Source of the DNA: Klebsormidium nitens
Taxonomy: Eukaryota > Plantae > Klebsormidiophyceae
DNA: 50,092 nt
Direction: 5' to 3'
Assembly (NCBI GenBank): GCA_000708835.1
Contig: DF237593.1
Coordinates: forward strand, 1 to 50,092
Shown here in pieces: positions 10,991-44,213 of the stretch. The translations under genes and the position numbers were made by a program. The notes below the pieces were generated by a model, which worked only from the letters and a program-made list of their open reading frames with translations, had not been told where the DNA came from and did not search any database. The first letter of the stretch is position 1. Each line of letters begins with the position of its first letter.

Positions 10991-13900
10991 ATGGATTCAC
11001 CAGAGAGACGGGCGCCAATAAAGCCAAACTGGGATGGCATCATGGTGAGACTACATCGTACAAAATCTGTTAACGCGTTTCGTCAGATACTTCTTTGGCA
11101 ACATGGCTCTTACTCAAGGACGTTTCTGCTTAATGACTCCTTGCATTGATGGAAGGTAGTTGATCAGGGATGTTGGTCAAAATGGTCACTATTGGCGTGA
11201 ATGTTGACAAGGAATGAGACTGCATGTGCAGTCACTGTATTCTTGCGCTTGTGAGTACATTTTTTTGGCAGGCAATTCGCTCTGTTCAGAGACCGTTGCT
11301 GCTCCTTGAATCCACTTTTGCGGGCGTGCCTTCTTAACACTGTTAACGGCGGCGTCACGATTTTGGACACCTGGAAAGCACAAAGTTGCGTCACAATGTC
11401 AGCTTTCGGCATAAGGATCCGTGCTGAAGAGTGATGGCTGCGTTTGTGGATTTTCGTATCGAAACAATCGGTACCAATTGCGTTTTGGCTCCCTGATAAA
11501 CTTTGATGCTTTGATTTGCGCACCTTACGTGCATGCCTTTCATCAATTGAGATGAAGTCAAAGGTTCTGTTCTTGACTCTCAGGTTTAGTATTGGCTCTC
11601 GCTCTTGCTTGACTATGAAGGCCGCATTCAGGAGAATACTATCGTGGCTTTATGTTTCATATGGTGCCATGAGCAACAGAAGTACTTGTCTGCCGAGCAT
11701 AGAACACTAATGTCTGGTGGCCCATAACACTATTCTTCCCAGGCACATGGAAGCATAACAAGTCGTGTCTGGAAGTGTGGAGAGGGCACTTGCTTGGAAG
11801 CTCACGACTTGCATGTTGGATATGGAGGTATTTTGTCTAGAAAGGAGTGGTCAACTTGGAGCTCCATGTTCCTCCAAAATTGAAGCACACGAGCTGCTCG
11901 TCCAAGAAAATCAATAGTAAGGGAGTCAACAGGGTGCACCTAACCCCGTCAATATTCCTATGTTCCAGAACCAGAGAAGCACTTTCATCTCTCACCGGGG
12001 ACTGCTTGCTCCTGGACCTGTAAACAGACCTCCTTTGACCAAGTATTCAACGAGTGTTTGTATCTCCGCTGGTCTTACATGCGGCCTTTGTTCCCTGCAG
12101 TCATCCCCAGGGAGCGCAGCCTTCATGGACTTGTGCGACACCCTCTCCCCCATCCGACCGGTCCCAACCTTCCATGCAAGCACTTTCAACGAGTTGAACC
12201 AGATCCGGTCCCCAGCGTCGCCCAACTTTCCGACCAGGAGACTGAAGGAGAAACGGTCAGGCTATTTCTGGTTGCAGCTTATGACGGTGTAATGGGATGA
12301 TGAGATAACAAAGAAAGAAAGCACCTATCTTGTCTAGGAGGCGTGTGACTGATGACTGGTTTCATGAAACAAGAGGGAAAGATTGGTGACATGTTCGACA
12401 AGGCAGAAAGTCTGTTTCATCGTTCTTGTCCAAAAGTACCAGCCCTCACATTCCCCTAGCTCCCTAGCAACCGAGCCTGCAGCTTCTTGGAGCATGGGAG
12501 GGTTCGTGCGCATCTGCATATGCTTGTCACACTTTAAAGGGTGCTTCCTTGTTGCAATGAGCATTCTTTGCTCGAGACCAGCAACCCAGCAGAAGTTCCT
12601 GCAAGCTGTGCAGAATCCTTAATGCAGCGTCCCTTCTCGGGGCTTTGCTTTCATTCTCATCCAAGAGCTCTCTCAACACAAGAGCTATGAACCAATCCAA
12701 ACAAATGTTTTTGAACTTCAAGTATGCCTTTGCTGGCTTCGTTCACTTGTCTGGACGTTCAGTCTCTCCCTGTTTAAACCTTTGCAGGTTTGCAAACAGC
12801 TCAGCTGCTGCGCTCCTCCTGGCCGCCACCACCGACGAGGCCCCCAAAACCCCCGGCCTCCTCAAGCGAGAACCGCTGCGCCAGACGTTTGGGCGCAACC
12901 TGAGCCGCATCGGCGACCCGAGCACAGCCTTGTTTGCTGGTCAAAGTGAGGAGGCCCCTGCTTCTGCCGCTGCCAGCAAACAGGTCCTGGTTGTGCAAGA
13001 AGGGGGCAGTGTGGGGGACTGTGAGAGCAAGCTCGCCTTGAAAGGTGCAACGGAGGATCCTGTGGTTGCGGGGGCCAGGTCATTGCCAGCTCAGCAGGGG
13101 CAGCCTAATACTCGCTGCCCACCCCCCAAAACAGAGCACATGGAGGAGGCGACAAAACCTGCCGAAGCAAAGGGCGAAGACCTGGGGGCAAAGCCAGAAT
13201 CTTCAAGGACTGCTGACGATGGTCAGAAGGCAAGCGGCAGCAAAAGGGGGAGGGACGAACCACAGCCGGATGCAGACAATTTGGCCCCTCAGGCTGCTGC
13301 GCCACCGGCTTTCCTCAAGTCTCTGAAAGCTGATTCGGATCTGCCGGCAACTGTTGTCGTCCAGCCTCCAGAAAGCAAGCGGGGGAAAGCAAGTGCATCT
13401 GACCAGGATGCCAAGACAGTCCTTGCAGTCCCAACGCCAAACCCTTACAACCCCTGCTCAACGGTAATCCCTGGTTCACAGCAAGCTAAGGAATCTGTCA
13501 TGCCCCCTATAGCTTCCCCGGTTCCACCGACTAAACTCACAGAGGCCGCTGCTGGACCTTTGGATCAAGAGGCGGAGGAAAAGAAAGCGGAGGGAGGGGC
13601 GACGAGGTCAGGGGCGGAGCAACCAAGTTTGGGCACCCAGCTTCACCGCGAGCTTTCATTTGCTGTGAAGCAGAGCGGGCAAGTGGCTTCTGCTTCTGAG
13701 AGGGCTCTTCAAGCCCAGGAAGTAGCTAGCGAGTCGAAGAGCCAGGCCATCCTGCCGGCACCTGCTGCAATGGAGCTCACCCCTCCGACACCGAAACTCG
13801 CGGCGGCAGTACAGGACAACCCAGAAGTAAGGCCAAGGCAGACAAGGAGCCGGACAATGGAGAAGGGCGAAGGGTCGGGGTCCAAGCAGAGAGCTGGGGG

Positions 13901-16900
13901 CACGGGCATCGTGCTGGGGGTGCTGCCAAAGGGAAAGCGGAGCTTGAGCAACAGGAAAAAGTCGAGGTTTGTCTCGGGAGGAGAGGACTCGAGTGCGGCG
14001 GAGGATGCTGGGGGGTCGTCTGACGACACAGAGAGAACGGTGTCGGCGGATGGAGCAGTTGCAGACGAAGGGGCGCAGAGGCTGCAAACGAGTGTGTGTG
14101 GGGCTGTGGCGGGGGCTGGAATTTTTGGAGAGGATGAGGCGGGATCCAGCCCAAGCAAAGTGGACGGAGGCGCCGGAATAGAAAGTCAGCAAGGGGCCGC
14201 AGAAACGGCTCTGGCGGATACAGAGAGTGTGAAAGAAGCCGGGAAGGCGTTGGGAAGCAGGGAAGACCTTGACGGGCCGGCGAAAGAGACAGGGCTGGTG
14301 CGACAGAGTGCCGTTGCAGTGCTTGAGCCCTGCCAAAAAGCGGCCGAGCCTGAGAGTGCGAGGCATGCTTCTCCCCCCCGGTCAACCGTTTTGCCTCAGC
14401 TCAAGGGAGTCCGGAGCCCCAGGAAGGGGGTGCGCAGGGGCCAGGAGACTCCGCCCAAGGCGCCGGCCAATGCGGCGCCGCCACCTGGCGGCGCCAAGCA
14501 GACAGAGGAGGACGTGGCGCAGCTGCTGGTGGATCTGTCTGAGGGGCGGACGCCGGAGAAGGCGAAACGGCGGCTGATCGGGGAAGAGGCCACGCCGACC
14601 AGCGGCTTGGGGCAGAAACGGATCGCGGTGGAGAGCGCGCCTGCTGCAGCAGAGAAGTTGGAAGGAGGGGTTGCTGGCAGTGGGCGGACGACTCCAATTC
14701 AGGTGGCGACAGCTGTCAAGGTGGAGGCGATTAGTGCAAGTGTGCACGTTGTGTCTGGCCCTGCGGTCAGCTGTGAACCGGCAGCCACCCCCCGGTCTGT
14801 GGTGTTTCAGGACGCCAAGAACGGAACGTCTTCATCGGGTGAGGACACTCGAAGCCTGCTTGCTTGTCCGAGGGGACCTCGCTTGGATCAACGCCTGAGA
14901 AGATGGTGTTTTTGCATCTTGTAGGAACTTGAAATGACGTTAGGGTTAATTGTCGATTGCGTCCTCTTTTCCGGCTCTTGGCTTATAGGTCGTGCAAAGA
15001 GCCTTTGACGCATCTGCCTCTGGAGTGTGCATTGTTAAAGTAACACTGCTGAAACACAGCTGCTTTCAAAAGAGACAGATGCCGGCAAAACGGGCAAGGA
15101 AGACGGACTCGTTCTGTACACTGTTCCTTGTATCCCGTTGGATACCCAACAAGCTCGTGACTGTGCTGCTCAGCCGTTAGTTAGCCACTTCCACTATGTC
15201 GTTCTCCAATCCAGGAGTGTTCCCTGCTAACCAGATCTACTTCGAACGCCCAGGTGCTTTGGGCGGAAACACCGGCCGTGCGCGTCGCCTCGACTTCGAC
15301 GCCGACGCCGCGCGCCGTCAGAGCCTCACCGCCCGACAGGACCCCCGCCTCTCCCTCGAAGCCCAGGGAAGCTGGCCCGGTTTCTCGGCCGTACAGAACT
15401 CCCCAGCCCAGAGCCAAATGTACATCTCGGTCGCCAACGCGAGCTCGACGCCCGGCCCCAGAAACGGAACGCCGCAGTCTGGACAGAACCCCCCAGAAAC
15501 GGTTAAGATGGTGGTTAAACAAGAGGGCGGAGACAACGCCTGGCAGCCAGGACAGAAGCGGGGCGCTACGCCCGAGGGGGAAGGGGAAAGAGCGGCGAAA
15601 CGGGAGAGGGTTTCGTTCTCGGACGGGGTCTACCAGGACGCGAAGGACGCTTCGGACGCAACTGCGGCGGCGCTGTCCGCGGCCATGGGGGCGCTGTCCG
15701 CGTGCAACACGCCTGCCACGTGTCAGCCGACGGTTGGCCGCCCAAATCCGACGCCGGTGCAGGCAAGACCCGCTCAAGCTCCACCCGTGGTCGCCCGGCC
15801 TTCTGGGGGGCCTGTTTGGAAGGCAGGTGGCAACGAGCGAAGCAATCTGGCGGTGACACCTGTCGCCATGCACAACGCTCAGCCTTCCTCCTGGCCCGTT
15901 GCTACTCCTCCTGGAGCCCCCTCAGCCTTCCAGCACGGCAACCCGAGCGTAACGCCGGGGCAGGCGAAGCAGGGCTACGTTACGCCCCCTCCACGCTGCG
16001 CACAGCCGGTCGTCAGGCCTCAGGGTTTGGCCTCGCCCCTCGTGACATCAGCACCCGGGGTGACGTCAGCGGCCGCTCCCTTCAACCCAAACGTCGCCAT
16101 CGTGCCGAAACCCCTGCCCCTGCCCGCCCCGGTACGGGCGGCCAAACCCTTAAACCTCGCGCGCCTCGGGGCTGGGTTAAGCGCCGGGACGGTGGTTAGG
16201 GTAACCCCCGGGGTGGGTCCCGTCCCCCCCGAGCACCACACCCACCTGCCTGGGCCGCAATCGGCGATGCCCGGCCCGACAGGGCCTCCGGGAAAGCGCG
16301 CGAGCTTTCCACCCACGCAGCGCCCGCAGGCGTTCACGAGCACTCGCTTCCCCGGGTACTCGCACTACACGCCCAGTTACCAGAAGGCCCTGCCGCGGCC
16401 GGCGCCGCAGGGTTACGGGGCGGTTTCGATGCCGTTCGGCCAGGCGCAGGGCCCCCCGCCGGGCATGTCGCCCGCGGTCGTGCAGCGGCAGAAGATGGAG
16501 GCGGCGATCGAGCGGAAACCCGCACAGCCGGACCCGTTGAGCGAGCTCCAGTTGGACCTGGACCTGGAGATGGACCTCGTGGTCGTCCACGAGAGCCCGC
16601 CGCAGCAGCCCAAGTGAGTGACGCGGGCCTGCCACGTGTCTGGTTGGCTGACGTCATGGTGACCATGTTGTCTGTGGACCTGGTCGAGGGAGGGAAGCCG
16701 GCGGTGCAGACGAGCCAAATCGGTCTCTGTTTGTTTTAACGGGCCGGTTCGGGCTTGACCATGCCATGTTTAGAACGCAAGCCGTGTTCGATTTTACTTT
16801 GCGCCCCTCGTAGCCACAAACCGTGTGTTCCTTCATATCCTTTAATCTGTGCTTCTTCGAACTTCTGGGAAATTCGTTCGACAATGGGGTCCTGCTCGTA

Positions 16901-19900
16901 TTCCAGGATCTCTCTCCAGTCCTTCCCAGTCATTCGGTATTGTCGGGTTGTGCGGTTTTCACTGATGGGAGCTCTGAAACTTGGTGCGCCTCGTGCAGGA
17001 AACCGGCGGGGACTTGCAAACGGTGCCACTGCAAAAAGTCGCGGTGCCTCAAGCTGTGAGTCCCCCCGTCCTTCCGCTTGCTTAGCAGCCTTCCTGAGGT
17101 CGCCTCTGCCGTCGAAGGTTGCTGTGTTAGCGAGCTATCTAACCGCTCTGCCCATCGTCCGAGCGCCACGTTGGCGAACCTACTGTGGCACAAACAGGCT
17201 GAGCCCTGTCCACAAAATTTAATCGAGAGCTTTTCTAGCTCACCGCTGTTGAAAAGCCTCTTTGAACCCGCCGAGTGCAGTCGCACCCTGCAGTCATGGT
17301 CTGAAAGGGGCCTGCTTGAAACTGTCCACTGATCAAAGTATTTGCCTTGGAGAGGATCCAGCCGAAATCCGCCAAAAACAGAACCAGTCCTCAAATGATC
17401 TTCCAACCCCTTGCAGGTACTGCGAGTGCTTCGCTGCCAACGTATACTGCACAGGCTGCGACTGCTTGGACTGCCAGAACCGGCCCGAATTTGAGGACAT
17501 TGTGATGGCCAAGAAGGAGGAGATCGAGCGCAAGGACCCCCACGCGTTTGCGCCCAAGATCGTTGAGGGCGAGTCGCCCTCCCCCACTGTGAGTATACTG
17601 GTCGCCTTGGAAGGATAGCTTCGTTTTCAGCTCAAGGTTCTGTCTAGTGAAACAGGCGTCAGCAATCTTCAACCGACCTGTGAGGAGATTTTCTGAGAGA
17701 ACCAAACAGAACCTTTCTTCAGCTGCGTTACTTGACGGGTGGGGCTCTTTTTAGTATGTCGGCTGATAGCCGTAATCTTGCCTGCGCGTCTGTCCTATCC
17801 AGCCCTCGCGAGCCCCCCGTTTATGAGCGGTTAAAGAGACACCCTACAGACTGTCGGGGCTTGAACGTTGTTCCTAAGCTTGACCACCCTCCTTTGTACA
17901 ATTTGAAACATCCGTTTGGCGGCTGAGTAGAAGCCCTCGGATCTGTCCTCTGCAGAAAGGCGAGACCCCCGCCTCGGGAAAGCACAAGAAGGGCTGCCAC
18001 TGCAAGAAGTCGATGTGCCAGAAGAAGTACTGCGAGTGCTTCCAGGTACGTCCACTCAATCCCGACAACTTTCGGGACTTATCTCTGAACCATTCCTTTT
18101 TTTTATCCAATACGACACGGGTGTATCTGACTTGACATGCACCGGACGATCGGAATCGGATTAGAAGTGGTGGAATGCTTCTTTGAAGCGGGGGCTGATT
18201 TTGTTGAGGACGGCGGTCTGTCCCAGATGTCCTTGTTAACACAACGTTCTACTTCCTTCAACCTGGCGAATCACGAGTCTCTTCAAACCTGGCGCGCAAA
18301 ACCATATGGATTCATTTCCAAACACTCTGCATCGTTTCCAGAAAGGAAGCCCTAGGTATTTGAAATCATCCAACACGAATACACAACGTTCTCGGACGCA
18401 CGATCCAACTTGCAAACGCCCGGGCCTCGAAAGCCAGAAACGGCCGACAATCAACTTCGCACAAAATGAGAGCGTCTTAGGCCCAATTGCGAGTCGCTCG
18501 AGTCCTCCTCTGGATCTGGCTGATTTTAGGGTCTCAGGTTTCAGGATTCCGGGTCGTAGAAATTGAGGGTCTTGCCTCCGTTCAGTTTGTACCGAACCAA
18601 CGCAAATATGGACCAGAAACGCGATAGCTAGAAGCCAAGACACGTCACATTGAAATCCTAGTCTCATCAGTTTCGTCGTTCGCTTCCAGGCTGGCGTTGC
18701 CTGCACGGACGCGTGTCGCTGCGAGAACTGCGCCAACGAGTTCGGCACGAAGGACAGCCACAGCCACGGCCCGCACTGCGACCACGCCGGGGGGGGCGCC
18801 GTTGAGGCCGCCGGCATGCGCTCGCCTGCAACACCGGGCTTTGGCCACATCAGGTGCGCGGTTCTGAAGATTACTCTTGAAATCTCAGTGTATTGTCTGA
18901 GAGTTTCCCTGCTTTTGGTCCCGAGACAGTGACGTGAGGCTCCCGTCCGATGAGGTCAGGAAGTGATCGTCAAGAGTAGCGACGGCGACGGCGACGGCGT
19001 GCGCTCGCGGATGACTCCGGGCTTCGGCCATATCAGGTGCGGTGTCTTTGTTTCTTTCTCCTTTCCTTCTTTTTTGAGATCTCCTTACTTTCTGCTCTCA
19101 GAAAGGCGACGTCGGGCTCCATTCGGGTCATGTCAGACCGTTTTAATAGCCCTGACGACCCGGCATGCGCTCTCTCTTGCGACGCAAGGCTTGGCCACAT
19201 CAGGTGTGCCATTTTTGGAAGTCCCTAAAAAACCCTTTTGAAACTTCGGTTTGAGACTGTCCCACTTTCTGCTTCGGTTAAAAGCCACACTAACGTGGGT
19301 TGATCATAACGCAACAAGTAGTCTCGACTCGATGGCGCTGTATTTCTTGTCCAAGACAGCTGTGCGTCTCTTCCACAAGCTGACAATAATGGCAGACAGA
19401 TGTATTCAGAAGATCTCTAAAATTCCATGCCGTCTCGCTAGGTCTCCGTCACTCTTGATCCGAAAAGACGCATGTCCGTTGGCCTTATTACCTACGTCAT
19501 CTGGCAGGCCTAGTAGGTACCCCAATTTGTCCGCTTATAACCGCACTCACACGACCCGTCCTGACGTGTGCAGCATCCAGCGCACATTCCCCGGGGGGGG
19601 CAAAATGGTCGCCAAAAAGCAGAGCCTGGACCCCCACGGAGACGAGATTTCCGCCCTGGACTTTCCGCACCATCACCCGACTAAGGAAAAGCGCCCCGAG
19701 ACTCCGCCCAAGCCGGAGCCTGCCACGTCAGCAGCGCCTGGCACGTCAGTGGCGCCGGCCACGTCAGCGGGCGCTGCCACGTCAGCAAAGGGACGGGGCC
19801 GGAAGAAAGACGCGGCGAAGGGCGACCTGAAGACAGTGCGGGAGAACAGGGGCGGCGCCGCCGAGCAGACGTGAGTATGAATGCGCTTCTGGTGTAAAAC

Positions 19901-21439
19901 TCGCCTCGGTGGAATTGCGCTCCTCGGCTTGTGAAGACTCGCGCCTGTCAGATTTCTCGCACTTCGCATCTGGAGTATTCTTTGTCCGCCTAATTTTGTC
20001 TTGTCCTGGTCGAGACAAGGCCTGGTTTGCGTAAAGTTCTGGATCTTCGAAAGTGACCAAGGTTGCCTTGGAATTAGGTGTCGATCGCAGATTGCTTGTT
20101 ATATTGGCAAGAGGGCTTCTCTCCCCTCGAGGCGCGTAGTGAACGGCGAAGCATTGTGGCAATCTGCTTCGCTGTCGAGCCAGATGTCTGGCTACCTTCC
20201 ACAACCTGACGTCTTTTCACAACGTTCGAAAGTCCTCGCGCCTTTCGAACCACAAGCGCACCAACTCGAGGGCAGAACACGACAGACCCCCAAAAATAAG
20301 CCCACAGTGTACGTGTTTCTCACGCCTCCACTTGCCTTCCCTCTTGCAGTTCCTCGGGAGTCTTCCCGAGCATCTCCTCATCCCCTGCGCGCTGGAGCCT
20401 TGCTTCCCCCGACCCCAGCCCGGTGTCCCGGTCCTATCCTATCCCGCCGTCGCCCCCTGACCGTCGCGGCTCAGATACCACGGAGTTTTTACACCTGCCC
20501 GCTTCTCCGTCCCCGAGTTTCGGCTCCGGTCCGCTTCTCCGGACCGGAACCGGAGTGGGCGGAACCCCGCTCTCGCGAGCGAAGGTCAGGTCTACCCCAC
20601 TGGGAGCGGTGATCTGGAATCCGGCGGATATGGCTTCCGATCCGGCGGATCGGCGGAACTCTGGCCAAGGGGTGTACTCGCCTCAGCGAACGCCCGGTGT
20701 CAGCTCTTCGGGGGGGATGCTCAAGCTCTCGAACCTTTCTGGGACTCCCACCCCGAACGCCGTGCCAAATTCGGCACTGGAGAAAGGGGGCGCAAGCGGT
20801 TTGCAGGAGGGAGGCGGGTTTGACACGGGTTACACTAACCCTAGCGCCTTAACCTGTGACGAGAGTGTCGACATGGACGGGCAAGACCCCCTCGCCGAGA
20901 GCTTCTTCATGGAGCCGTGCGACTATGGCGTGGAAGGGGACTTATACACATACGACCCCGGGCAGATGGACCTGCCCGCTTATGGCGAGGACGTATACGG
21001 TGAGGCTCCGAAGGAGAGCGTCCCCGTTTCCCCCCCCCCAAAAACGCAGCGAACCGGCCCCTCGTTTGTGAGTCTGAAGAATCTGTCGGTCGGGAGCGGG
21101 CGGCAGTACAACGAAGATCCAGATGATCCCTCGGCCGCGCTCCTGTCCCCGCAGGACGGGAAGCGCCGGCGGCTTTCAGCGGGGGGCAGGGTTTCGGGGG
21201 AGGCTTTTGTGTCGGCGGACGAAGCGACACCGATCCGGATATCGAAAACGGGTTCACCGACCAAAGTCATGGCCCCCGCGTTTGACTGGGGGGGATCCCC
21301 CGGGCTGGGGCGCATGGCAACCCCCGGGAAGAAGTCGCTGAATTTGTCGATGCTTCCGTCACTGCCTATCCTGCCGGCGCGGTTGAGCGGCGGCGAAGGG
21401 TCGGGATTGGTTGCGCCAGAGAACGTTTCACAAGAGTAG
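10991..21439 (+). CDS. TSO1: TSO1/TCX (tesmin/LIN54-like) CRC-domain protein, DREAM complex DNA-binding subunit, ~1852 aa; exons 10991-11044, 12101-12255, 12788-14838, 15185-16613, 16999-17055, 17417-17588, 17956-18045, 18690-18853, (optional 18977-19036, 19150-19203), 19574-19870, 20350-21439
   Basis: Two CXC domains ([34 protein letters not shown] and [35 protein letters not shown]) joined by the hinge [12 protein letters not shown] (RNPxAFxPK-like). The N-terminus MDSPERR...[11 protein letters not shown] resembles the plant TCX MDTP..LSPIRPV motif. All junctions are phase-compatible; the core exons total 5559 nt. The long exons may hide unrecognised introns. Confidence 0.88.
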
Positions 21440-22891
21440 TGTTTGCATTATGTGTTATTAGCGGCAAGCTGAGTAGCCGAATTCAGGCGCCAGTGAATGC
21501 TGTAGGCATAGGCTTTGGGTGGGGGAGTGTGGGGAAAGGTAGACAGGTATGGTAAGTAGACAGGCGTTGACTGAAATTCCGTTCGTGCGGCGACTGTAAT
21601 GCAGACTCGATCCTGAGCGTCAAAGACCTAGTACGATGCACCTTGTATAATATCTTGTCGCACAGCAAGGATAGACTCGCTCGGTAAAGGAAGTCTGCTG
21701 AGCCGCACAATTTTGGAAGTACCTAGAGCAGATTGCAGACTTTATCACAGGATTACCCGACTCGGTTAAATGGGCCCCTTACCGGGTTATCCTTTACCTG
21801 ATCAGACGCAATTTTACAAAAAGGAGGTGTACGGTACCGTTCGCACACATGCATCTTTTCAATCGGAATCTCGAAGCATTTCCAGGACTGTCGTGAGAAT
21901 CAAGCTCCGCAATGTCCTGATCGCTGTAGTGCTCTTACTTGGCCAGAATTCGCCCTCTACAAAATCCCTCCACACAAGCATCTCCCTTGCAAGTGAAACA
22001 TGAAAGCTGCATACTGCATCTGTCGTCTCCTGATGTCCTCGCTCTATTCGTTACTAGCGTTTTAGTATCACGCTCGGGATGTTGACGACGTTAAATTCAC
22101 TTCAATCCGTTTTCGGCTCGATCGGAGACTGTCACCATGCACCGTTATAGTACATGGCAAAATGGCAGTGGATTTATCCAATAATACGTTCATGCATCAT
22201 GCTTGTAATAGGATCGCGCGCTGCACGAATTCTTAGTCACACGCATGGCAGAGCTAGAATGAATGCACAAATTGATTTGTCGGATGCACGGATGTCACAG
22301 CATGCATGGTCGATAGTGTCAATAGTACGAACATATATGTGCCGGATCGCAGACTGCACATATCAGCTAGTAGGTCGTACTATGAACTGAATGCTCCATT
22401 TCCATCATGGCATAGCGCGATGTTGCGCGATGTTGCGCGGTGTAATTGTCGCGGCGATATTTATGCAACATTTCTAGCTTAAGTTTCAAAATAATATGCG
22501 AAGTGTATATCAGGTGACTTTGCACGCACGTCAGTGATGGCGTTCTTCTCAATGGCTGGAACTTTGTTTTCGGAGGTGGTTTTTCATTAGATGGAAGTTT
22601 GTTTCAAGATATACGTCTTTATGCTTGGCTGTGATCTTTATTAGCACAGTCCTAGCAGATAACGTTCTCGAAATGTGTTCTTCAAAAAGTACGTTATTAC
22701 GCATACTAGACGCATCCTACACATACTACCGCCGAAATTCTCAAAAGGTATTATTAATGTAACTGCGAACCTTCTCCAACGTGGCCCTAAGCTAGCCATG
22801 TTCCGTCAGTGACCTTAAACGAAAGACACGTGTGTCAGTGCCATTCGCTCAATCTTTACCTCTTATCCTGTCTTCTCTCGTGTTGACTCTT

Positions 22892-22936
22892 TGCAACGTG
22901 CCGTTTCTGTGCAACGTGCCGTTTCTGTGCAACGTG
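22892..22936 (+). repeat. 18-bp tandem repeat TGCAACGTGCCGTTTCTG x2.5 in the 3' UTR of the secreted-protein gene
   Basis: Units at 22892-22909 and 22910-22927, partial unit at 22928-22936. Confidence 0.9.
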
Positions 22937-22956
22937 TCGATTTTTATGCAAAGAAT

Positions 22957-25415
22957 CTACAGCGCCATCTTGCGACCGCCCGGTAGGGGCACGTTGAGGG
23001 GCCCCACTCCCTGAGTGACGTTGGAAGTGCCCGAGTTCACAGTGACACTAAAGTACGGTGTGCTGTACTCGATGCGCGCGTTCTCAATCGATCCGGTCAG
23101 CAGGTCACTCTGCTTCTGGCCCTCCGTCTTCTGCAATGATCAGGGGAGTAGTAGTCGAGTTCAGATTACATAGCAAGGCTGGAAAAGTTCGCCCGTTGCT
23201 GACGAAGGTCACCTAAAAGAAGCCAAGCGTAAAGTAGAAAGCTCCTCATGAAGCCAGAAAAGCTGAGCTAAAACCTTCGAGAGGCTCTTGAACTCGAAAC
23301 GGATGGGGTAAGGTGGGCACGAATGCGAAGCGCATCTTTTTGTGGGTGTCTTATTAAGAGTGCTTCCTCTAGGTCCCGGTTCTTATCCCAATTTGGCTCA
23401 AACAGTTCGTGTCAACTTTGTTTTGAGTTATGGCTATGTCAAGTAAGGTCAAGCCCGAGGAAGGGTGGGGTTGCTTGGGAATTGATATTGGATGCGGGTG
23501 GGGAGCATGTAATTGTGGGTTTGGATTTTTGATCTGTTTGTGCTTGGGGAATTGATCAAAGACAACCCAGGTCTGACTCAACACAAAATACCGATATCTA
23601 TCTTGGCTCGACCCAGTCTGACACTGCGTGGGGGATCATGTCGATGAGCTCAAACGCGAAGAGGTCAACAAGAAATGATCCAACTCAATTATAGCTTCGG
23701 TCTCACTCCACATAAAATCGAGACTCGTCTTGGCTCAACTGAACCCGAGATTATAACTTACCTGCGTGGGCATCATGTTGATGAGCTTCAGCGCAAACGC
23801 GTCCACCTGCTGCTCCAGGACAACTAGACCGAGGCGGATGGGCTCGAAGAAGCCGGCGGTGTAGGGGGCGCCGGCCAGGAAGCCCTTGTCGCCGATAACG
23901 ATAGCGAGCAGCTGCTGGTGGACGGCGACAAAGGTCTTGAGCGTGGCGACAATCTTCTGGGCGTCCGCGTCGGGGTAGGTGAAGCCCGCGGGGACGAAGC
24001 CCTGGAGCGTCAGCACCATTTGGACGCTGTTGGCGATGTTGACGAAGCCCTGGGCCAGCTGCAAAAGAGGGAATAGAGACAGTCAACGATCTGACGAGAA
24101 TTTTCGAAGCGCAGTCTGAAAGACGTGACCCGGGGCAGGGGGGGGGGAGGAGAGAGGGAATAGAAACAGTTAACGATCTGACGAGAATTATCGAAGCGCC
24201 ATCTGAAAGACGTAACCAGGGACGAGGGGAGGGGAGACCAGGAGGATAGCGAGTTTAGAGGGGAGCGGAGTGAGGATTTCAGGTGCTCAAAAGGATAATA
24301 GAGGTATACCTCCAATGATTGCGACATGGGTTACTAAGGGCGGCTAACGAGGCGGGGCGGCGGAATGAGAGGCAGTTTGGAAGATTCGATTGGAAGGGTT
24401 TATGAGGTTAAGGACGAGTCGCGAAGAGGGGAGAAGGGGCGGTTCAAGAGATCTGGAAGGGAAACTTGTGTGAGGCGGTTTGTAAGAAGTGGCCAGCTCG
24501 GGGAGGTTAACAAGTGTGGAGGTGGAAGGAGGAAGCGTTTCGTGGCTAGGCATGATGAGGAAAGCTTTCAAAGATCTGGGCAGCCGCGAAGGGAGGGGGC
24601 GAAGGGGCGGTCAGCAGTTTGGAGCATGTGAGAGCCGGTTTGTAAAGATGCTTAGGAAAGGTTTGAAGTCGCGGCAAGCTCCGAAGAAGAGGGTCAAAGA
24701 GAGGGAGAAAGGGCTCGTGCCTGTGGAAAGGGATGTGAAAAGAAGTGGACAAGAGGTCAGAACGAATCAGACTGGTGAGCGAACTGCAGAACAAAAATAA
24801 TTGACCGTACTCCTATGACCAATTGAAGCAAGCTGAATGGGTGTTGAGGAGACCTTATATTGGTTTCGTGGGACATGTTCACACCGTCTTCAGGTCAAAC
24901 GTTTCCGCCAAAATGCTCCGGAAAGCTACTATTACCCGAAGCCACACTGCTGCTCGTTGACCCCTGAATCTGAGATGATATGAAGAAAGGTACCTCCTCC
25001 ACTGGTATTCAAGAGCTCTTTTGAGTCGGTTTCACCCTTACGCAGAATCAAAGGTGGTTTCTCATATTCCTGAAAGAGTTCGTTTTGAACAGCCGTTCAG
25101 TCTATTGCACACGATCAGTGGCCTGAGAGGATTATACTGATCTTGGGGTCTGCTGGAATGGGGTTTGATGGATCACGAAAGGAGAAAAGTCTTAGCAGAA
25201 ACACCTCCAACAGCAGCACTAACCTGGGGAACTTGCTGCTGGAAGTTGGTGGGAGTGAACTGGGCAACGCTTTGGAGCGAGCGGGAAGTGTCGGTCAGCA
25301 TGCCGATCGCGCCCGTCAGCACGTCAGCACCGATGCCCCTGCATGACGTCTGCGCGGAAGCAGACGTCACCGCCAGCACAACGAAGAAGAGAGTGGCCAG
25401 AGCGCGGGGAGCCAT
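22957..25415 (-). CDS. Secreted 220-aa protein resembling the fungal UVI-1 family; exons 25415-25224, 24058-23762, 23130-22957
   Basis: Signal peptide MAPRALATLFFVVLAVTSASA. Three phase-0 exons of 192, 297 and 174 nt with GT-AG introns. Core DADAQKIVATLKTFVAVHQQLLAIVIGDKG...FFEPIRLGLVVLEQQVDAFALKLINMMPTQ matches my recollection of the fungal UVI-1-like pattern F.xVHQ.LL..LIGK.G...EPIR..LV.LE..VD.FA..LI..IPTQ. The gene model is solid; the family call is not database-checked. Confidence 0.75.
24067..24230. repeat. 87-bp tandem duplication covering the branch point/polypyrimidine tract of intron 1 of the secreted-protein gene
   Basis: GAGGGAATAGAGACAGTCAACGATCTGACGAGAATTTTCGAAGCGC at 24067 recurs with a few mismatches at 24154. 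Confidence 0.9.
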
Positions 25416-25709
25416 CGGATCTGCAAAAAGGAGTCAGTGAGATGAGCATTTGAGCATTGCCGGAGCGTGGATTGGTTCTATGACTTGTGGGCTTACTTTT
25501 CGTCCCTTTCTGTTAAGCGCAAGAAGGATTTCAGAAAAGGAAGAGGGACCATTGAGCAGGAGACTAGGATGAAAGCTACGGTTACTTGGAGTACGCAGTG
25601 CTGCGCCGTCAACGCTCGTTTTGAAACGGAAACAAGGACCCAAGCCTGATAACGGTCAGCCCGTAAAGCCCGTTGAGCCCCATACTTTTCTTGAGTAGGA
25701 TTCATCTGA

Positions 25710-25718
25710 TTATATATA
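25710..25718 (-). promoter_or_regulatory. TATA box of the secreted-protein gene
   Basis: Minus-strand TATATATAA about 300 bp upstream of ATG 25415. A 5' UTR intron is suggested by donor GTAACC at 25585 and acceptor TTGCAG just before ATCCG-ATG. Confidence 0.55.
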
Positions 25719-28603
25719 CTTATCATGGAGGAACAAGGAGACCAGTTCTTACACCTTCAGTTCAGTGTCCAACAGAAGAATCCGCTACATAGCAATGCCT
25801 AATGCGCAGGTCAGCTTTTGGCTGTTCTCATAATTCTAAAAGTAGGAAGCTGAAAATGGGCTGGGAAAAATGTAGTGAAGCATACTCTCAAAAGCCAAAT
25901 GGTTCATTGACTTCTGAATTCAAACCTCATGGTTCACACAAGATAGTCCACAAACAAGTTGGTTTAAAACTCCTGAAGAGAAGTCCCTCCATACGTGACA
26001 TTGAAAGATCAACACCACTCTGTCAAAACTCTTAAGGAAGTCTTTACGAGTGCCCCAACGTCAAAAAAGGGAGCTTGTTGTGTGACTGGAAGTAGCCTTG
26101 AATAAACCCGGAACCACTGGAATGAATGCAAGCAGCTGATTAATGATCCGCCAAAGCGTCACGCAGAAGGAACGCAATCAACCGAACTTCAGAAGCACCA
26201 TGCACTGAGTGGGCTCTGAGTATCCCTTGTTTACATTGCATACATTCATCCAACCAGCAGCTCGTCACTGCTACTACTACACACCGTGACCAGCAGCGGC
26301 CTTTTGAACGTCCCTGACCAAAGCCGTCACAGCAGTCATACTGGCTGGCTGAATCAACTCCTTGCAGAACGAAGAACTTCATAAGAGAATGGAATCCGAA
26401 ATTTAAGATGGCAAACGCGCGGGTGTAGATAACAGCCAGGAGAACCAGTAGCACAAAGCCAATCTATAACTAAAAGAGAAAGGAAAAGCCAAAAGAGAAG
26501 TGGTAATCCGAGGCCCACCTCAATTGATGCGGCACGGAGCGGAGACCAATGCAAGCTTTGGAGGCGCTTTGGATTGCTGTGGGGTCGAAGAAGTAGCTCG
26601 ACGCCTGAGAGCTTTGAAGTTGCTTTGGGAAAGTGGAAAGAAGTGAGGATTTGGTTTGGCGCTCGCAGCGTTTTATACTCATCGAGCGGGGCCTTGCGTC
26701 TCACTTTCAGTACTTGAAGTCTCATGAGTCACGTATACAGTCTAGAGACGTCTAGGCTACAGTATAGACATGTACAAACGGGTTGGCACTGGGCTGCAAG
26801 GCGCAAACCCGTGTGCGCTCAGGCGGCTGCACTATCATCATCTGCATTATTATTCGCATCATACGTACCAGTACGTCTTTGACTACCTATGGTAGATTGG
26901 CCGCCAGAATTGTTAAACCAGTCCAGATTCCACACTGCACAGTGTGAGTCTGTGAGTTCAGAGGACAGGGGGAGCGGCACGACTTAGGACGGCGGTCCTG
27001 AGATGAGAGGTAGATCTACCCGACGAATGTATCCAAGGCACGAATCACGGTCCACCAGTGACAAGCCAGTACTACTTCAGCAGCTGCAGCCTGCAACCAC
27101 GTACCTAGTCACACCGATGATTGCTCAGTGGGCGAGCAGTGAGCACTCAGCACTGTGAGTGGCTGAGCAGCTGATTCGGAGACTCAATTCAAAAGAATGC
27201 CACGGTCCACGTGGCAGTGCAGGTTAAACTTGAGTAAACCTTGCAAGGGAGTCGGGACTCGGGAGCGGCGGGACTCGGTACCGTCTACCCTCCGTCTACC
27301 TATTCTATGCTCATCAGAAGAGGCGGCTCCTGAGAGGCTCTTGACAAGCCTGATATATTGTTCCAGCCTTCCAGGCTCAGCCAATCACAGTCCTGGAAAG
27401 CTGGAGCCTGGAACTTTCAAGTTATCTCTCGTACCGGTATTAATGGCTTCCAACGCCGGACGTAGACGCGTCCACGCCTCAAGCATGGTGGACCTTCGAG
27501 TATTACCTCAGAATGACGTACCCAGGTGCATGACTTGGGATGACGTCAGTAAACCGCTAGACCTGCGTAACAGTGACGCCAAACACAGAGCAATCAGCCG
27601 CAATGATGGGACCTTTAATTACTGTGCCCTCACGGTCAAATCCGTGCATGATTTTACGAATGATTGATCGAGCATGGCATCATGCATATCGGCTACGAAT
27701 TGGCTCACGAGACTGGAGCAAACTTGGAATAGTTAGGGCTAGCCGCTACCGGTACTTGCGCACCGCGGTCCGCGAAGCGTCCTTCCAGTCTGACCTGAGG
27801 GAAACCGGTGTTTACCACGAACGCCAAACGTAACCGACCGATTTCGAGGGAAACCTCAGAAACCGACTGGGGGCTGCCCTGTGTTGGTCGGAAAACCGAC
27901 TGATATTATGGGCGTCGGTTTAGTGTTAGTCTTTGGTGTGTTCTTATTGTCCTACTATTGAAGTGGAGAGCTTGTGGTCAAAAACATAGTCGAAGTCGCC
28001 TGAATGGAAGAATATACCTACTTGTTTTCGTCTGCTTCTCTGCTCCATATTAGACCAACACCTCTTCGATTTGGGGGATTGGAGCCTCATTGGAACGGCC
28101 CAGAATACTGGAAAGCGAGTGTTATCCTCTTCTACACCGTATTTGTCCACCAAACCGACTCTGTTCATCTGGGTCGCCGGTTAGCCAGAAGCCCAACTCC
28201 GACCGACTGGTCGTGGGATTCGGCCGACCGCCCTCAAGGTGGCCGGTTTTGCGCCGGGTTCTCAAAAACCTCGTGGTAAATTGTAATCACTGCTGCTGAC
28301 CATGAATCCTGCAAATCGCAACCGAAGATGCGCCACAGCGGCCACACTCTCACACTTTTACTCTTTTACTACCTAGCTTCCCTGTGGCGCTCGTGAGAAG
28401 CGACCCTGTCCAGTCGCGTCCCCGTCGCGTCACGACTTCACGGGCCTGAAACCTAGACGTCGTAAACCCCTCAGCTCAAGGCTCCCAAACTGCACAAGTT
28501 GAAGCACGCAACACAACCCAGATCGAGTTGCGTGCTTCCCCCAAGAGGGTCCCCTGGGCCCTTGCTATTAAAAGCCTCAAGCGGCCTGGGCCCAGGATCG
28601 GCT

Positions 28604-31668: not shown

Positions 31669-34115
31669 TCACGAGGGTTCCAATACAGTTCGGAACGTCA
31701 AGCTCAGCCGGGTTCCTTTCACAGCTTTCCGCTTGGGAACCGCATGCTCCCAGTCTCGCTGCATATTTCCCCGCATCAGTAAGACGTCTCCGTTTCCCAA
31801 GTAAAAACTAAATTTGCTCGTCTCTTCCCCTAGCTCTTTCTCATCCTGCGTTTCTCCCCTCGAACTGATCACATCAACAGCTGACACCTTTTCTCGCTTT
31901 GTTCTTTTTGTCCCATGAGCTGAATCGACTTCTGCGCTGGCCCGCTTGCTTCTGACCTTTCTGCGTACGAGAAAGTCGCGTGACGTTCCGAGACTGAGAG
32001 ACGCGATTGTCGGGGCGATGCCGAACAGCTTCTCGGCGTCCGAATGCCAGGCAACGGACGAGTCGCCGTCCGCGTACCGGTTGATCAGGCAGCTGTTGAA
32101 TGCGTACCCGGGAACCGCCTCGCACACCTGCACAAGCCTGGGCAGTTGTTAGTGACTGTGGCAAATGTGGGCTGCTCGAATCAGTCTGCTAGTGAGCCGG
32201 TCGAGTCGAAGTCGCCGCAAGGAGGGCTTGGGGTCCAGACACTAAAGAATACACTGTGACCCCAGATTGAAAAGGGGTCCCAGCATAGGTATAAATAGGT
32301 CCGAGAAAAGTGAAAGCTTTAAAAAGACTCGAACGGAATCTGTTTCTGGCATGATCCTGAACCACCGAACCAGGGCTCGAAATTGCCACAAAGGCCTTGG
32401 CAGAAGCAGAACGACTTAAAGAGAGACTTCGCTAAGAAGACTCTGGTCACCTGTAAAGCAGCAAAACATACAGGCAGGTTGACGAAGGCAAGCGCGTTAG
32501 CACACAGAAAGCAGCGCGCTACAATAGGAAGGGAATATCTAAACGGTCTTAGAAAGCGGAATGCTGAACCCCAGTGATCGTATCATTTTTCGCATGATTT
32601 TATAACAGCACAGAAGGGACTAGTGCCGGGAGTGGCTCGGATGTGACGGGCAAAGAAACGAGGACACTTGAACGTCCCCAAACCAGGGAAAAGAAACGTG
32701 GCTTAATCGTGCAAATTTCCGGATAGGCAAAAGACGACCTGCTCCGACGTAGACTTGACAAGAGAATTTGGCATAACTCGGATGGAAGCGGGTGGTCAGC
32801 ATATGCAACAAGTGAGACTAGGATTTTTTTAGGGGGACAACTGGATTGTGCTGTCTCAGCCCTCTCAGTTCGTCTCGAACTTCAAATGAGATTCCGCTCT
32901 TCCAAGCTTGTAGACGCCCCTGCTTTTCCAGCGATCCTTATAAGGTGCATCAGCTGGTTCTGTCAATGACAAATCAGTGCTCCAGCCTTAGCTGATTAGT
33001 GACAGAACCGGCATGGGGTGCAGAAAGACGATCCTTGTAACCAACACAAAATCAAACGGTATCAGGACTCAGTTGAGCGCTCACCGCATCTCTGATTGCT
33101 TGTAGCACTGGAAAGTCGTCCCAAATGTGGTACGCGGGTGCATGTCCGCTGTACTTGAGAGGCTTTAACCCCGGGTCCGCGATGTAGAACGTTTCTCTTG
33201 GCTGCGCAGAAAAGGCATGGGCTTCGAATCGTCCGTGAAGGAGAGACCGGCGAAACAAGGCAGACTATTCTCGTAATCGAGGGACCAGGAGTGGGCTACC
33301 TTACTGAAGGCGATTGTGAACTTCACCATGCAGAAACCACAACTAACAAAGATTCTGCAGAATCATCGACTTCTTTAATCATAAATCCTGTTGTCCAGCA
33401 ATTGAGGTATGTCCGCTGAAAACGTCAATCCACAAGATCCTGCCGCCAATCACACCTCTGAAATGATCAAGCTTCATCCGTTGCTGCCAAGGACCCCTCC
33501 GTCAGAGATCGCAGGGACAGGGTTCTTTCAGTCTCAATCTTGAGCATTTTCGCGGTGGCTTCCTCATGAAAGACTGACAAGTAGAGCTGGGACTCAATGT
33601 AATTGGCTTTTGTCCTCTTGTTTGTGTCAGGAGGTCACTCGCATCGGGAGGGCATATCCAGTCAGCATCCGCGCCGTTGTGGCTGCTGATTCTGCCGCGC
33701 AACAAACCCCAAAGATCAATAGTACCTCTGGTCACCAGAGAATTGTGACCCTTCGCTCAAACCTCTGCCTTCTACTACATGCAACAGGACTGACTGCCAC
33801 AACGTTCAACGACTACTGAGCTGCACAACAGCATACCACATAGAAAAATGAGAGCCCTCACAGAAACTTTGTGGATCACACTACTGGCAATAGATTCATC
33901 ACACAGCTGCTCACCTGCAGAGACCTGCGTCCCCTGACAAAGATCTCGGGCCTCTCCCAGGGCAGACTACTATCCAGCGCCTTGAACCATTCATCCGCCT
34001 GGTCTGCTGCAAAGTGGCCCGGCAGATAGGAGATGCTGGACCCGCCCCCTAGGTCCAATTCCTGAGCAGCCCTAGTTGCTGCTGTTGGGGGATCCCTGCG
34101 TGTCTTGGCGGTCAT
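31669..34115 (-). CDS. ALKBH2: ALKBH2-like Fe(II)/2-oxoglutarate DNA demethylase, 258 aa; exons 34115-33915, 33201-33085, 32127-31669
   Basis: LPWERPEIFVRGRRSLQPRET, LKYSG, FNSCLINRYADGDSSVAWHSD (HxD), WEHAVPKR (H) and RLSLTFR (RxxxxxR). Three phase-0 exons. Confidence 0.93.
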
Positions 34116-43821: not shown

Positions 43822-44213
43822 GTGAACACCCTTGAAGTTACTCTAAAGTACAAGAAGTTACTACAGAGACTGCCGAAGAAACCCACGGTTCTTGTCGCGT
43901 TGTGTCAGGCGTGAGGGTTCGCCCCGACTTCCCGTGGGTAGGACGCAGGCTGGTCCCGTGACCCCGGGTTGACCCCGACACACCGTAGGCCGGGTTGTGC
44001 CTGTCTTGGCTTTAGTGGCAGATCAACCGGCTAGGTTGGGGACCCACAGTGCAAGGGGCTGCACTACCCATAACCCGATACCCGGTTGGATTTGTTCCCC
44101 GCCCTGGAGTCACGACGACACAACTTTAGACATTACGGAACCCAGGTTACGAGGCATCTAGTGAACAAGGCACCTCAAACGCACATACTACCGTGGACTT
44201 GAACCAAAGAACC

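What the first reader, a model, noticed from the sequence alone, without database searches (positions are those of the whole stretch)
22957..25718. Fungal UVI-1-like secreted protein domesticated in an algal-type genome (candidate fungus-to-alga horizontal transfer)
Seen: a complete three-exon gene with signal peptide, TATA box, 5' UTR intron, amphipathic helical core and a C-terminal tail with an NVT sequon. Recalled knowledge: the pattern ..LT..S..L......F..I......Y.DADA..IV..L.TFV.VHQ.LL..IG..G.....FFEPIR..LV.LE..VD.FA..LI...PTQ......L.GSI..A...YS matches small secreted fungal proteins of the UVI-1 type (UV-induced in Bipolaris oryzae), which I do not know from land plants. Inference: an acquired extracellular protein that may serve surface, UV or desiccation adaptation in a terrestrial alga. 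The flanking genes are plant-type and the gene has host-style introns, which argues against contamination.
Basis: partly seen in the sequence, partly recalled or inferred. Interest (0 to 1): 0.8.

Follow-up and report, generated by a model that had tools for sequence, protein, structure and literature searches.

The report
Fungal-type secreted lipid-binding gene in Klebsormidium
The land-dwelling green alga Klebsormidium nitens carries a real, selectively maintained gene for a small secreted helical-bundle protein of a family otherwise found in fungi and in mosses and liverworts, so it was most likely picked up from a fungus long ago; this is a good new example of a known kind of event, not a new kind.

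Summary
The window is a whole 50,092-base scaffold of Klebsormidium nitens. The three-exon minus-strand model is identical to the annotated protein KFL_006440030 (220 aa).

- **Family and fold:** The protein belongs to the fungal HsbA/C166 family, whose members some databases name 'UVI-1 protein'. Its predicted fold is the five-helix fatty-acid-binding bundle of Mp1p/Afmp4p.
- **Not contamination:** A related Klebsormidium-like contig has the same gene, with the same intron positions, next to the same TCX neighbour. dN/dS between the two copies is 0.21.
- **Relatives:** All named relatives are Dikarya fungi or bryophytes (Marchantia, Sphagnum; Physcomitrella by Pfam annotation).
- **Placement:** The alga's clade sits on a long branch beside Botryobasidium (Agaricomycetes). 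It shares with Botryobasidium a rare loop insertion and an IGD motif. One shared origin with the bryophyte genes is not rejected (AU p=0.21).
- **Expression:** Contigs of three RNA runs showed no expression. A UV or drying role is untested.

The scan had already flagged UVI-1-like genes on four other pieces of this genome. One follow-up there reached a similar conclusion. I could not test those paralogues.

Verdict: a new member of a known kind (fungus-to-streptophyte gene transfer), of moderate interest.

The parts
25224..25415 (-). Coding exon 1 (64 aa): start codon, signal peptide (about residues 1-21, nt 25353-25415) and helix 1 of the domain. GT donor at 25223-25222.
   Evidence: identical to P0062 residues 1-64; 87% nt identity to the orthologue in L002.
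24059..25223 (-). Intron 1 (1165 nt, phase 0). It holds an 87-nt tandem duplication at 24066-24234. It lies one codon downstream of an intron position shared by the Botryobasidium and Auricularia genes.
   Evidence: fungal intron maps; not alignable with the orthologue's 946-nt intron.
23762..24058 (-). Coding exon 2 (99 aa): core of the C166/HsbA-type domain (helices 2-4), with the clade-specific IGDKG motif and a 4-residue loop insertion.
   Evidence: Pfam PF17615 E=2e-8; big protein search; 89% nt identity to L002; loop and motif count.
23131..23761 (-). Intron 2 (631 nt, phase 0), after the conserved PTQ. It is not shared with the three fungal genes or the Marchantia and Sphagnum genes examined.
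22957..23130 (-). Coding exon 3 (57 aa plus stop): helix 5 and a low-confidence C-terminal tail with the NVT sequon (23014-23022).
   Evidence: 79% nt identity to L002.
25416..25718 (-). Upstream region: an acceptor-like CAG at 25421-25423, 5 nt before the ATG and conserved in the orthologue, and a TATA-like run at 25710-25718. The 5' UTR intron is plausible but unproven.
   Evidence: no RNA contig covers it.
12645..21800 (+). Neighbouring TCX/CXC-domain gene. It is not part of the finding but anchors the locus as algal: it is transcribed in K. nitens RNA runs and is syntenic in the related contig.
   Evidence: Pfam TCR domain; RNA contigs over 20400-21799; L002 synteny.

Best explanation
KFL_006440030 is a genuine nuclear gene of Klebsormidium nitens. 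It encodes a secreted single-domain protein of about 200 residues after signal-peptide removal. The protein belongs to the HsbA superfamily, in the C166/'UVI-1' subfamily. It folds as a five-helix bundle like the fungal Mp1p/Afmp4p ligand-binding domains. Inferred mechanism: outside the cell or in the wall it encloses a fatty-acid-like hydrophobic ligand in the core of the bundle, or it sticks to hydrophobic surfaces as Aspergillus HsbA does. The gene's ancestor came from a Dikarya fungus. The best-supported donor is an Agaricomycete close to Botryobasidium. The transfer predates the split of at least three Klebsormidium-like lineages, and the gene has since been kept by purifying selection with large alga-style introns. 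Shown here: gene structure, family, fold, synteny, selection, and a distribution limited to fungi and streptophytes. Inferred: secretion, ligand binding, direction and donor of the transfer, and independence from the bryophyte genes.
For: Gene and host:
- The model equals annotated P0062.
- Logan DNA contigs of the source sample join the 3' end of TCX to exons 3 and 2 at even depth. RNA contigs of three K. nitens runs match TCX at 100%.
- Contig L002 from another run carries the orthologue with identical GT-AG positions and the same TCX neighbour. Exons are 79-89% identical and the introns cannot be aligned.
- Nei-Gojobori dN=0.09, dS=0.44, ratio 0.21.
- A more distant copy (P0002, 72-74% identical) has exons 2 and 3 joined in contig L001.

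Family:
- PF17615 scores 36.6 bits against a cut-off of 36.7. Relatives score 50-216 bits and also hit HsbA PF12296.
- 53 representative clusters were found. Every one with an organism name is from Pezizomycetes, Agaricomycetes, Marchantia or Sphagnum.

Fold:
- AF2 gives pLDDT 78 and a five-helix bundle over residues 30-186.
- The best PDB matches are Afmp4p and Mp1p LBD1/2 bound to palmitic or arachidonic acid (5ecf_E: TM by target 0.87, rmsd 2.4).
- The best Atlas match is a Basidiomycota HsbA cluster, TM 0.78.

Donor:
- The ML tree puts the alga's clade beside Botryobasidium (97/84) inside a group whose named members are all Agaricomycetes.
- IGD instead of IGK is confined to these two. Their loops are 12 and 10 residues, against 8 in 43 of 49 rows; one other row has 11.

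Secretion in plants:
- A Physcomitrella PF17615 protein has hydroxyproline validated by mass spectrometry (bioRxiv 10.1101/2024.03.26.586753).
Against: - No RNA contig covers the gene in three K. nitens RNA runs, so expression in this species is unproven.
- The Pfam score is a hair under the curated cut-off, and HsbA itself is not hit directly by this protein.
- The alga's clade has a long stem (0.92). Without Botryobasidium it floats with weak support.
- AU tests do not reject joining it to the bryophyte clade (p=0.21) or to P0027 (p=0.17).
- About half of the related clusters have no organism label, so members in other algae or plants could be hidden.
- Ligand binding is inferred from fold only.
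Confidence: 0.7

Rival explanations
1. There was one ancient transfer from a fungus into an early streptophyte, shared by Klebsormidium and the bryophytes. The gene was later lost in other algae and in vascular plants, and it evolved fast in Klebsormidium. The gene is then vertically inherited within streptophytes, not a separate fungus-to-alga event.
For: The AU test does not reject a single Klebsormidium+bryophyte clade (p=0.21). The alga's clade is a long branch whose position collapses when Botryobasidium is removed. A similar ancestral-transfer-plus-loss history is published for fungal fruit-body lectins in land plants (PMC11906373). The scan notes several further UVI-1-like loci in this genome that may be less diverged (untested).
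Against: The free ML tree separates the two plant clades. The bryophyte clade (96/98) lies within a starred 39-row clade (96/90) that also holds Pezizomycete and Serendipita sequences, while the alga's clade sits with Agaricomycetes. The IGD motif and a lengthened loop are shared with Botryobasidium, not with the bryophyte sequences. No intron is shared: the Marchantia and Sphagnum domain-coding regions are single exons.
Confidence: 0.25
2. The gene is fungal contamination or a chimeric assembly and does not belong to the alga.
For: The family is otherwise mainly fungal. The scaffold is short (50 kb) with three N gaps. No algal RNA covers the gene.
Against: An independent contig from another run has the same gene beside the same algal TCX gene. 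Logan contigs of the source reads bridge TCX and the gene at equal depth. The introns are 631 and 1165 nt, against 50-80 nt in the fungal genes examined. The best fungal identity is only about 35-50%. GC3 is 0.77-0.91, against 0.59-0.77 for neighbouring genes.
Confidence: 0.02
3. The family is an old eukaryotic one inherited vertically by fungi and plants with massive loss, or it moved from plants to fungi.
For: Many related clusters have no organism label, so the true range is not fully known. Trees here are unrooted.
Against: Named fungal members span Pezizomycetes and many Agaricomycete orders, and a paper held in the library describes HsbA-family proteins in the Mucorales fungus Mucor (title and abstract of PMC13537970). 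Streptophyte members form at most two tight clades nested among fungal ones. No named hit comes from chlorophytes, vascular plants, animals or protists.
Confidence: 0.05

Closest known systems
Pfam PF17615 (C166, family of unknown function), including proteins named 'UVI-1 protein' in UniRef (Morchella importuna P0082, Exidia glandulosa P0045)
   Same: Same conserved core (D-x-D-A, TFVxVHQxLL, IGxxG, EPIR, LExxVD, PTQ), the same length of about 170-220 aa, and an N-terminal signal peptide.
   Different: The score is 0.1 bit under Pfam's cut-off. It has IGDKG instead of IGKHG, a 4-residue longer loop, a 35-residue C-terminal tail with an N-glycosylation sequon, and two long introns.
Mp1p ligand-binding domains (Talaromyces marneffei) and Afmp4p (Aspergillus fumigatus), solved with palmitic or arachidonic acid
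   Same: Five-helix bundle of the same topology (TM by target up to 0.87, rmsd 2.4 A, Foldseek probability 1.0) and a secreted or cell-wall location.
   Different: Only 9-15% sequence identity and no sequence-level match to any PDB chain. Ligand binding has not been tested for this protein. Mp1p has two domains plus a Ser/Thr-rich region and a GPI signal (my own knowledge), and neither is seen here.
HsbA, hydrophobic surface binding protein A (Pfam PF12296)
   Same: Relatives of this protein hit PF12296. The Atlas feature and fold searches both put HsbA clusters first.
   Different: This protein itself does not reach E<=0.1 against PF12296. Adsorption to hydrophobic surfaces and recruitment of cutinase are properties of the Aspergillus oryzae protein (my own knowledge) and are not tested here.
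Bryophyte members of the same family (Marchantia MPTK1_4g06545 and Mp_4g06550; Sphagnum CY35_12G120700; a Physcomitrella PF17615 protein)
   Same: Streptophyte genes of a fungal-type family, with a signal peptide, so probably also acquired from fungi.
   Different: They are tandem arrays of 2-7 domains in one polypeptide, encoded without introns in the domain region. They carry the consensus IGKHG and the short loop, and they lie near Pezizomycete and Serendipita sequences in the tree.
Published fungus-to-land-plant transfers such as fungal fruit-body lectins (PMC11906373) and the HGT catalogue in PMC12513842
   Same: The same kind of event: a small secreted or defence-type fungal protein family fixed in early-diverging streptophytes and missing from seed plants.
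   Different: I found no mention of this family or this gene in the texts I could search. The supplementary lists were not available.

Membership tests
Pfam PF17615 (C166 / 'UVI-1'-type) | Score at or above the curated gathering threshold (36.7 bits) | tested here: inconclusive
   P0062 scores 36.6 bits, E=7e-9. Its close relative P0002 scores 37.3. The Marchantia, Serendipita and P0064 relatives score 50-216.
Pfam PF17615 (C166 / 'UVI-1'-type) | Reciprocal sequence similarity to accepted members over the whole domain | tested here: met
   Exon 2 alone finds 53 clusters. A profile of 43 members covers P0062 residues 1-212 at 185 bits. 4 invariant and 14 nearly invariant columns are shared.
HsbA superfamily (PF12296) | Direct Pfam match | tested here: not met
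   There is no PF12296 hit for P0062 at E<=0.1. Relatives hit it at 19-65 bits, so the link is transitive only.
Mp1p/Afmp4p-type five-helix lipid-binding fold | Five-helix bundle superposable on solved ligand-binding domains | tested here: met
   AF2 model with pLDDT above 90 for 105 residues. Foldseek gives TM by target 0.72-0.87 at probability 1.0.
Mp1p/Afmp4p-type five-helix lipid-binding fold | Binding of a fatty acid in a central hydrophobic cavity | not testable with these tools
   This needs purified protein (ITC, native MS or a crystal structure).
Secreted protein | Cleavable N-terminal signal peptide; extracellular detection | tested here: inconclusive
   The N-terminus has an n-region, a hydrophobic core and an ASA|Q site, conserved in the orthologue. 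No predictor or proteome data were on hand. A Physcomitrella family member carries hydroxyproline, a mark of the secretory pathway.
Horizontally acquired gene (fungus to streptophyte alga) | Integrated in host DNA and inherited in the host lineage | tested here: met
   Synteny with TCX and identical intron positions in a second Klebsormidium-like contig; dN/dS 0.21.
Horizontally acquired gene (fungus to streptophyte alga) | Recipient clade nested within donor diversity with support; absent from the recipient's other relatives | tested here: inconclusive
   The clade is nested among Agaricomycetes at 97/84 and backed by a shared indel. The placement is unstable without Botryobasidium, and monophyly with bryophytes is not rejected. 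Many hits have no taxon label.

The most novel reading that the evidence does not exclude
Klebsormidium obtained this gene in its own DNA-level transfer from an early Agaricomycete (Botryobasidium/Cantharellales-like), separate from the transfer that seeded the bryophyte genes. Its first intron would be the donor's own intron, slid by one codon and greatly enlarged. That would be a rare case of a basidiomycete gene, intron included, being domesticated by a streptophyte alga. It would also give a relative time link between Agaricomycete and Klebsormidiophyceae history.
Probability: 0.3. Interest if true: 0.6.

Novelty: new member of a known kind. Interest (0 to 1): 0.42.

Why it matters
Streptophyte algae such as Klebsormidium are the models for how green life adapted to land, and gene transfer from soil microbes is thought to have helped. 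This locus adds a well-anchored case with synteny, selection and a known fold. A fungal extracellular lipid- or hydrophobic-surface-binding protein has been taken up by a terrestrial alga. The same family also occurs, in a different architecture, in mosses and liverworts. If the protein handles surface lipids, it bears on how early land algae built water-repellent or protective surfaces. It also shows that the 'family of unknown function' C166 has the Mp1p fatty-acid-binding fold, which gives a direct biochemical test.

Tried and rejected
- **Profile word search:** the search with alignment A1 returned only 6 proteins, because the 8000-candidate limit was hit. It was of no use for the distribution.
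- **Literature:** searches for UVI-1, PF17615, PF12296, HsbA with bryophytes or Klebsormidium, and the gene identifiers gave no paper on this gene or on this family in plants. The only exception was a figure legend on Physcomitrella. One accession-like term was my own guess and means nothing. The supplements of PMC12513842 are not held. One paper reading failed on a too-short term.
- **Solved structures by sequence:** only designed coiled coils at E>0.01.
- **Shared introns as a marker:** intron 1 lies one codon from an Agaricomycete intron. By my rough count such a near-coincidence has a chance of about 0.1, so I treat it as suggestive only.
- **Shared C-terminal tail with P0027 (PLPGGRKM):** the tail is not conserved in the closest orthologue, the organism of P0027 is unknown, and the AU test is neutral. 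Left unexplained.
- **Contig L006 (P0021):** I tried to tell plant from fungus by its neighbours. Nothing diagnostic turned up, only a second C166 gene nearby.
- **Second copy in the window:** none found by a six-frame profile scan.
- **Findings search by sequence:** blank, which means nothing according to the operators.
- **Joined exons:** The exons were searched apart by reference. The full-length protein was used only as the stored database record P0062. dN/dS was summed over separate exon alignments.
Full report
**What is there**

The finding lies on the minus strand. Reading the sequence and its ORFs gives three coding exons:
- 25415-25224 (64 aa, starting with ATG)
- 24058-23762 (99 aa)
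- 23130-22957 (57 aa plus stop)

A word search with a relative then returned the stored record P0062, 'hypothetical protein KFL_006440030 [Klebsormidium nitens]'. It is 220 aa, lies on a contig of 50,092 bases, and its sequence equals the three exons in order.

The N-terminus looks like a signal peptide, and the NVT sequon is at residues 200-202. A TATA-like run lies at 25710-25718. An acceptor-like CAG lies 5 nt before the ATG and is conserved in the orthologue. No RNA was available to prove the 5' UTR intron.

**Is it really the alga's gene?**

- Logan contigs of the probable source sample run from the 3' end of the neighbouring TCX gene through exons 3 and 2 (21217-23997) and onward (from 23984), at even depth.
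- Contigs of three K. nitens RNA runs match the TCX 3' end perfectly but do not cover 21800-26300.
- A 26-kb contig from another run (L002, SRR23617307) carries the orthologue. It has three exons at 87, 89 and 79% nucleotide identity, the same splice positions, a complete 220-aa frame, introns of different length that cannot be aligned, and the TCX gene alongside at 74-89%.
- Summed over the separately aligned exons, dN=0.090, dS=0.44 and dN/dS=0.21.
- A more distant copy (P0002, contig L001, 72-74% protein identity) has exons 2 and 3 joined directly and is preceded by an intron-like acceptor. It is either a partly spliced transcript or a gene without intron 2.

Contamination or chimerism is therefore very unlikely. 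The gene has been kept under purifying selection across at least three Klebsormidium-like lineages. Expression in K. nitens itself remains unshown.

**What family and fold**

- Exon 2 hits Pfam PF17615 (C166, unknown function) at E=2e-8. The full protein scores 36.6 bits against a cut-off of 36.7. Relatives score 50-216 bits and also hit HsbA, PF12296.
- The exhaustive search with exon 2 found 53 representative clusters at E<=0.001.
- Every cluster with an organism name falls into two groups:
  - Fungi: Pyronema, Morchella, Sphaerosporella, Jaapia, Serendipita, Botryobasidium, Auricularia, Exidia, Heliocybe, Trametes, Ganoderma, Cubamyces, Mycena.
  - Bryophytes: Marchantia polymorpha and Sphagnum magellanicum.
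- A Physcomitrella protein annotated with PF17615 carries hydroxyproline validated by mass spectrometry, which marks passage through the secretory pathway (bioRxiv 10.1101/2024.03.26.586753).
- With a 43-sequence alignment, AlphaFold2 gives a five-helix bundle over residues 30-186 (mean pLDDT 78, with 105 residues above 90). The C-terminal tail is disordered.
- Foldseek's best solved matches are Afmp4p and the two ligand-binding domains of Mp1p, crystallised with palmitic or arachidonic acid (TM by target up to 0.87, rmsd 2.4 A). Next come a Drechmeria virulence factor and the small subunit of a Pleurotus laccase-like protein.
- The Atlas fold search puts a Basidiomycota HsbA cluster first, at TM 0.78.
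- No PDB chain is found by sequence.

**How it most likely works**

The signal peptide, the fold and the behaviour of relatives together indicate a secreted or wall-associated protein. It would either enclose a fatty-acid-like ligand in the bundle core or adsorb to hydrophobic surfaces. This is inference from structure. Nothing here tests binding, and nothing links the gene to UV or drying.

**Where it came from**

A maximum-likelihood tree of 69 domains (LG+C20) gives the following:
- The three Klebsormidium-type sequences form a clade (100/99) on a long stem (0.92).
- That clade is sister to Botryobasidium (97/84), within a group whose named members are all Agaricomycetes.
- The Marchantia, Sphagnum and related metagenomic sequences form a separate clade (96/98). 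It lies within a larger starred clade that also holds Pezizomycete and Serendipita sequences.

Two rare characters back the Botryobasidium link:
- IGD instead of IGK occurs only in these four rows.
- The loop after it is 12 residues in the alga and 10 in Botryobasidium, against 8 in 43 of 49 rows. One other row has 11.

The signal is weak, however:
- Without Botryobasidium the alga's clade floats.
- AU tests do not reject uniting it with the bryophyte clade (p=0.21) or with P0027 (p=0.17).

Intron positions give little help:
- Botryobasidium and Auricularia share an intron before K in 'P|KIAxG'. The alga's intron 1 lies one codon later, in the same phase.
- All three fungal genes share an intron after 'LExxVD', which the alga lacks.
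- Intron 2 of the alga is its own.
- The Marchantia and Sphagnum domain regions have no introns.

I conclude that a fungal origin is very likely. A transfer separate from the bryophyte one, from an Agaricomycete, is somewhat more likely than not. A single early streptophyte acquisition remains open.

**Comparison with what is known, and novelty**

Fungus-to-streptophyte transfers of small secreted proteins are well documented, for example fruit-body lectins (PMC11906373) and the large catalogue in PMC12513842. I found no text mentioning this family in plants or this gene, but the catalogues' supplementary lists were not available to me.

Within this scan, UVI-1-like genes were already flagged on four other pieces of the K. 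nitens genome. One follow-up there reached a similar conclusion, with an ascomycete affinity. I could not retrieve those paralogues, so I could not test whether they bridge this gene to the bryophyte clade.

The finding is a sound new member of a known kind. Its added value is the fold assignment for C166 and a well-anchored algal case.

**Limits**

- About half of the related clusters have no organism label.
- Only contigs, not raw reads, were laid for RNA.
- The tree rests on about 180 columns.

Noticed in passing
window 44193-50075 (+): A very long open frame (1960 aa, interrupted only by an N gap) that by eye has a CCHC knuckle, protease, a reverse-transcriptase YxDD motif and integrase. 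It is apparently a young Ty3/gypsy-type retrotransposon at the scaffold end.
   Followed up: no
window 22888-22936 and 24066-24234: An 18-nt tandem repeat (2.7 copies) lies just downstream of the stop codon. An 87-nt tandem duplication (87% match) lies at the 3' end of intron 1.
   Followed up: partly
window 7141-8469 (-): A single-exon ORF of 442 aa with seven JAZ-type C2H2 zinc fingers and a C-terminal RING finger.
   Followed up: partly
window 31669-32133 (-): An exon encoding the C-terminal part of an AlkB-like 2OG-Fe(II) oxygenase (PF13532, E=3e-26).
   Followed up: partly
window about 28.58-29.55 kb, 43.13-43.8 kb, 48.7-49.3 kb: Three runs of N (assembly gaps). None lies between the TCX gene and the finding.
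   Followed up: no
L003 (P0027, run ERR4329568), C-terminus: A family member of unknown organism ends in PLPGGRKMLK, and the K. nitens protein ends in PLPGGRKMAL (8 identical residues, 19 of 24 nt). The closest Klebsormidium orthologue differs at three of these residues.
   Followed up: partly
L009 (Marchantia, P0001) and L010 (Sphagnum, P0093): The bryophyte relatives are tandem arrays of 5 and 7 near-identical domains in one polypeptide. Each is encoded by essentially one exon.
   Followed up: partly
L006 10001-10627 and 14342-14800: Two C166-type genes lie 4 kb apart on a 269-kb ENA metagenome contig of unknown organism.
   Followed up: partly
window 25606-25619 versus L002 2909-2922: A 14-nt stretch upstream of the ATG is present in both orthologues but in opposite orientation. 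It may be chance.
   Followed up: no
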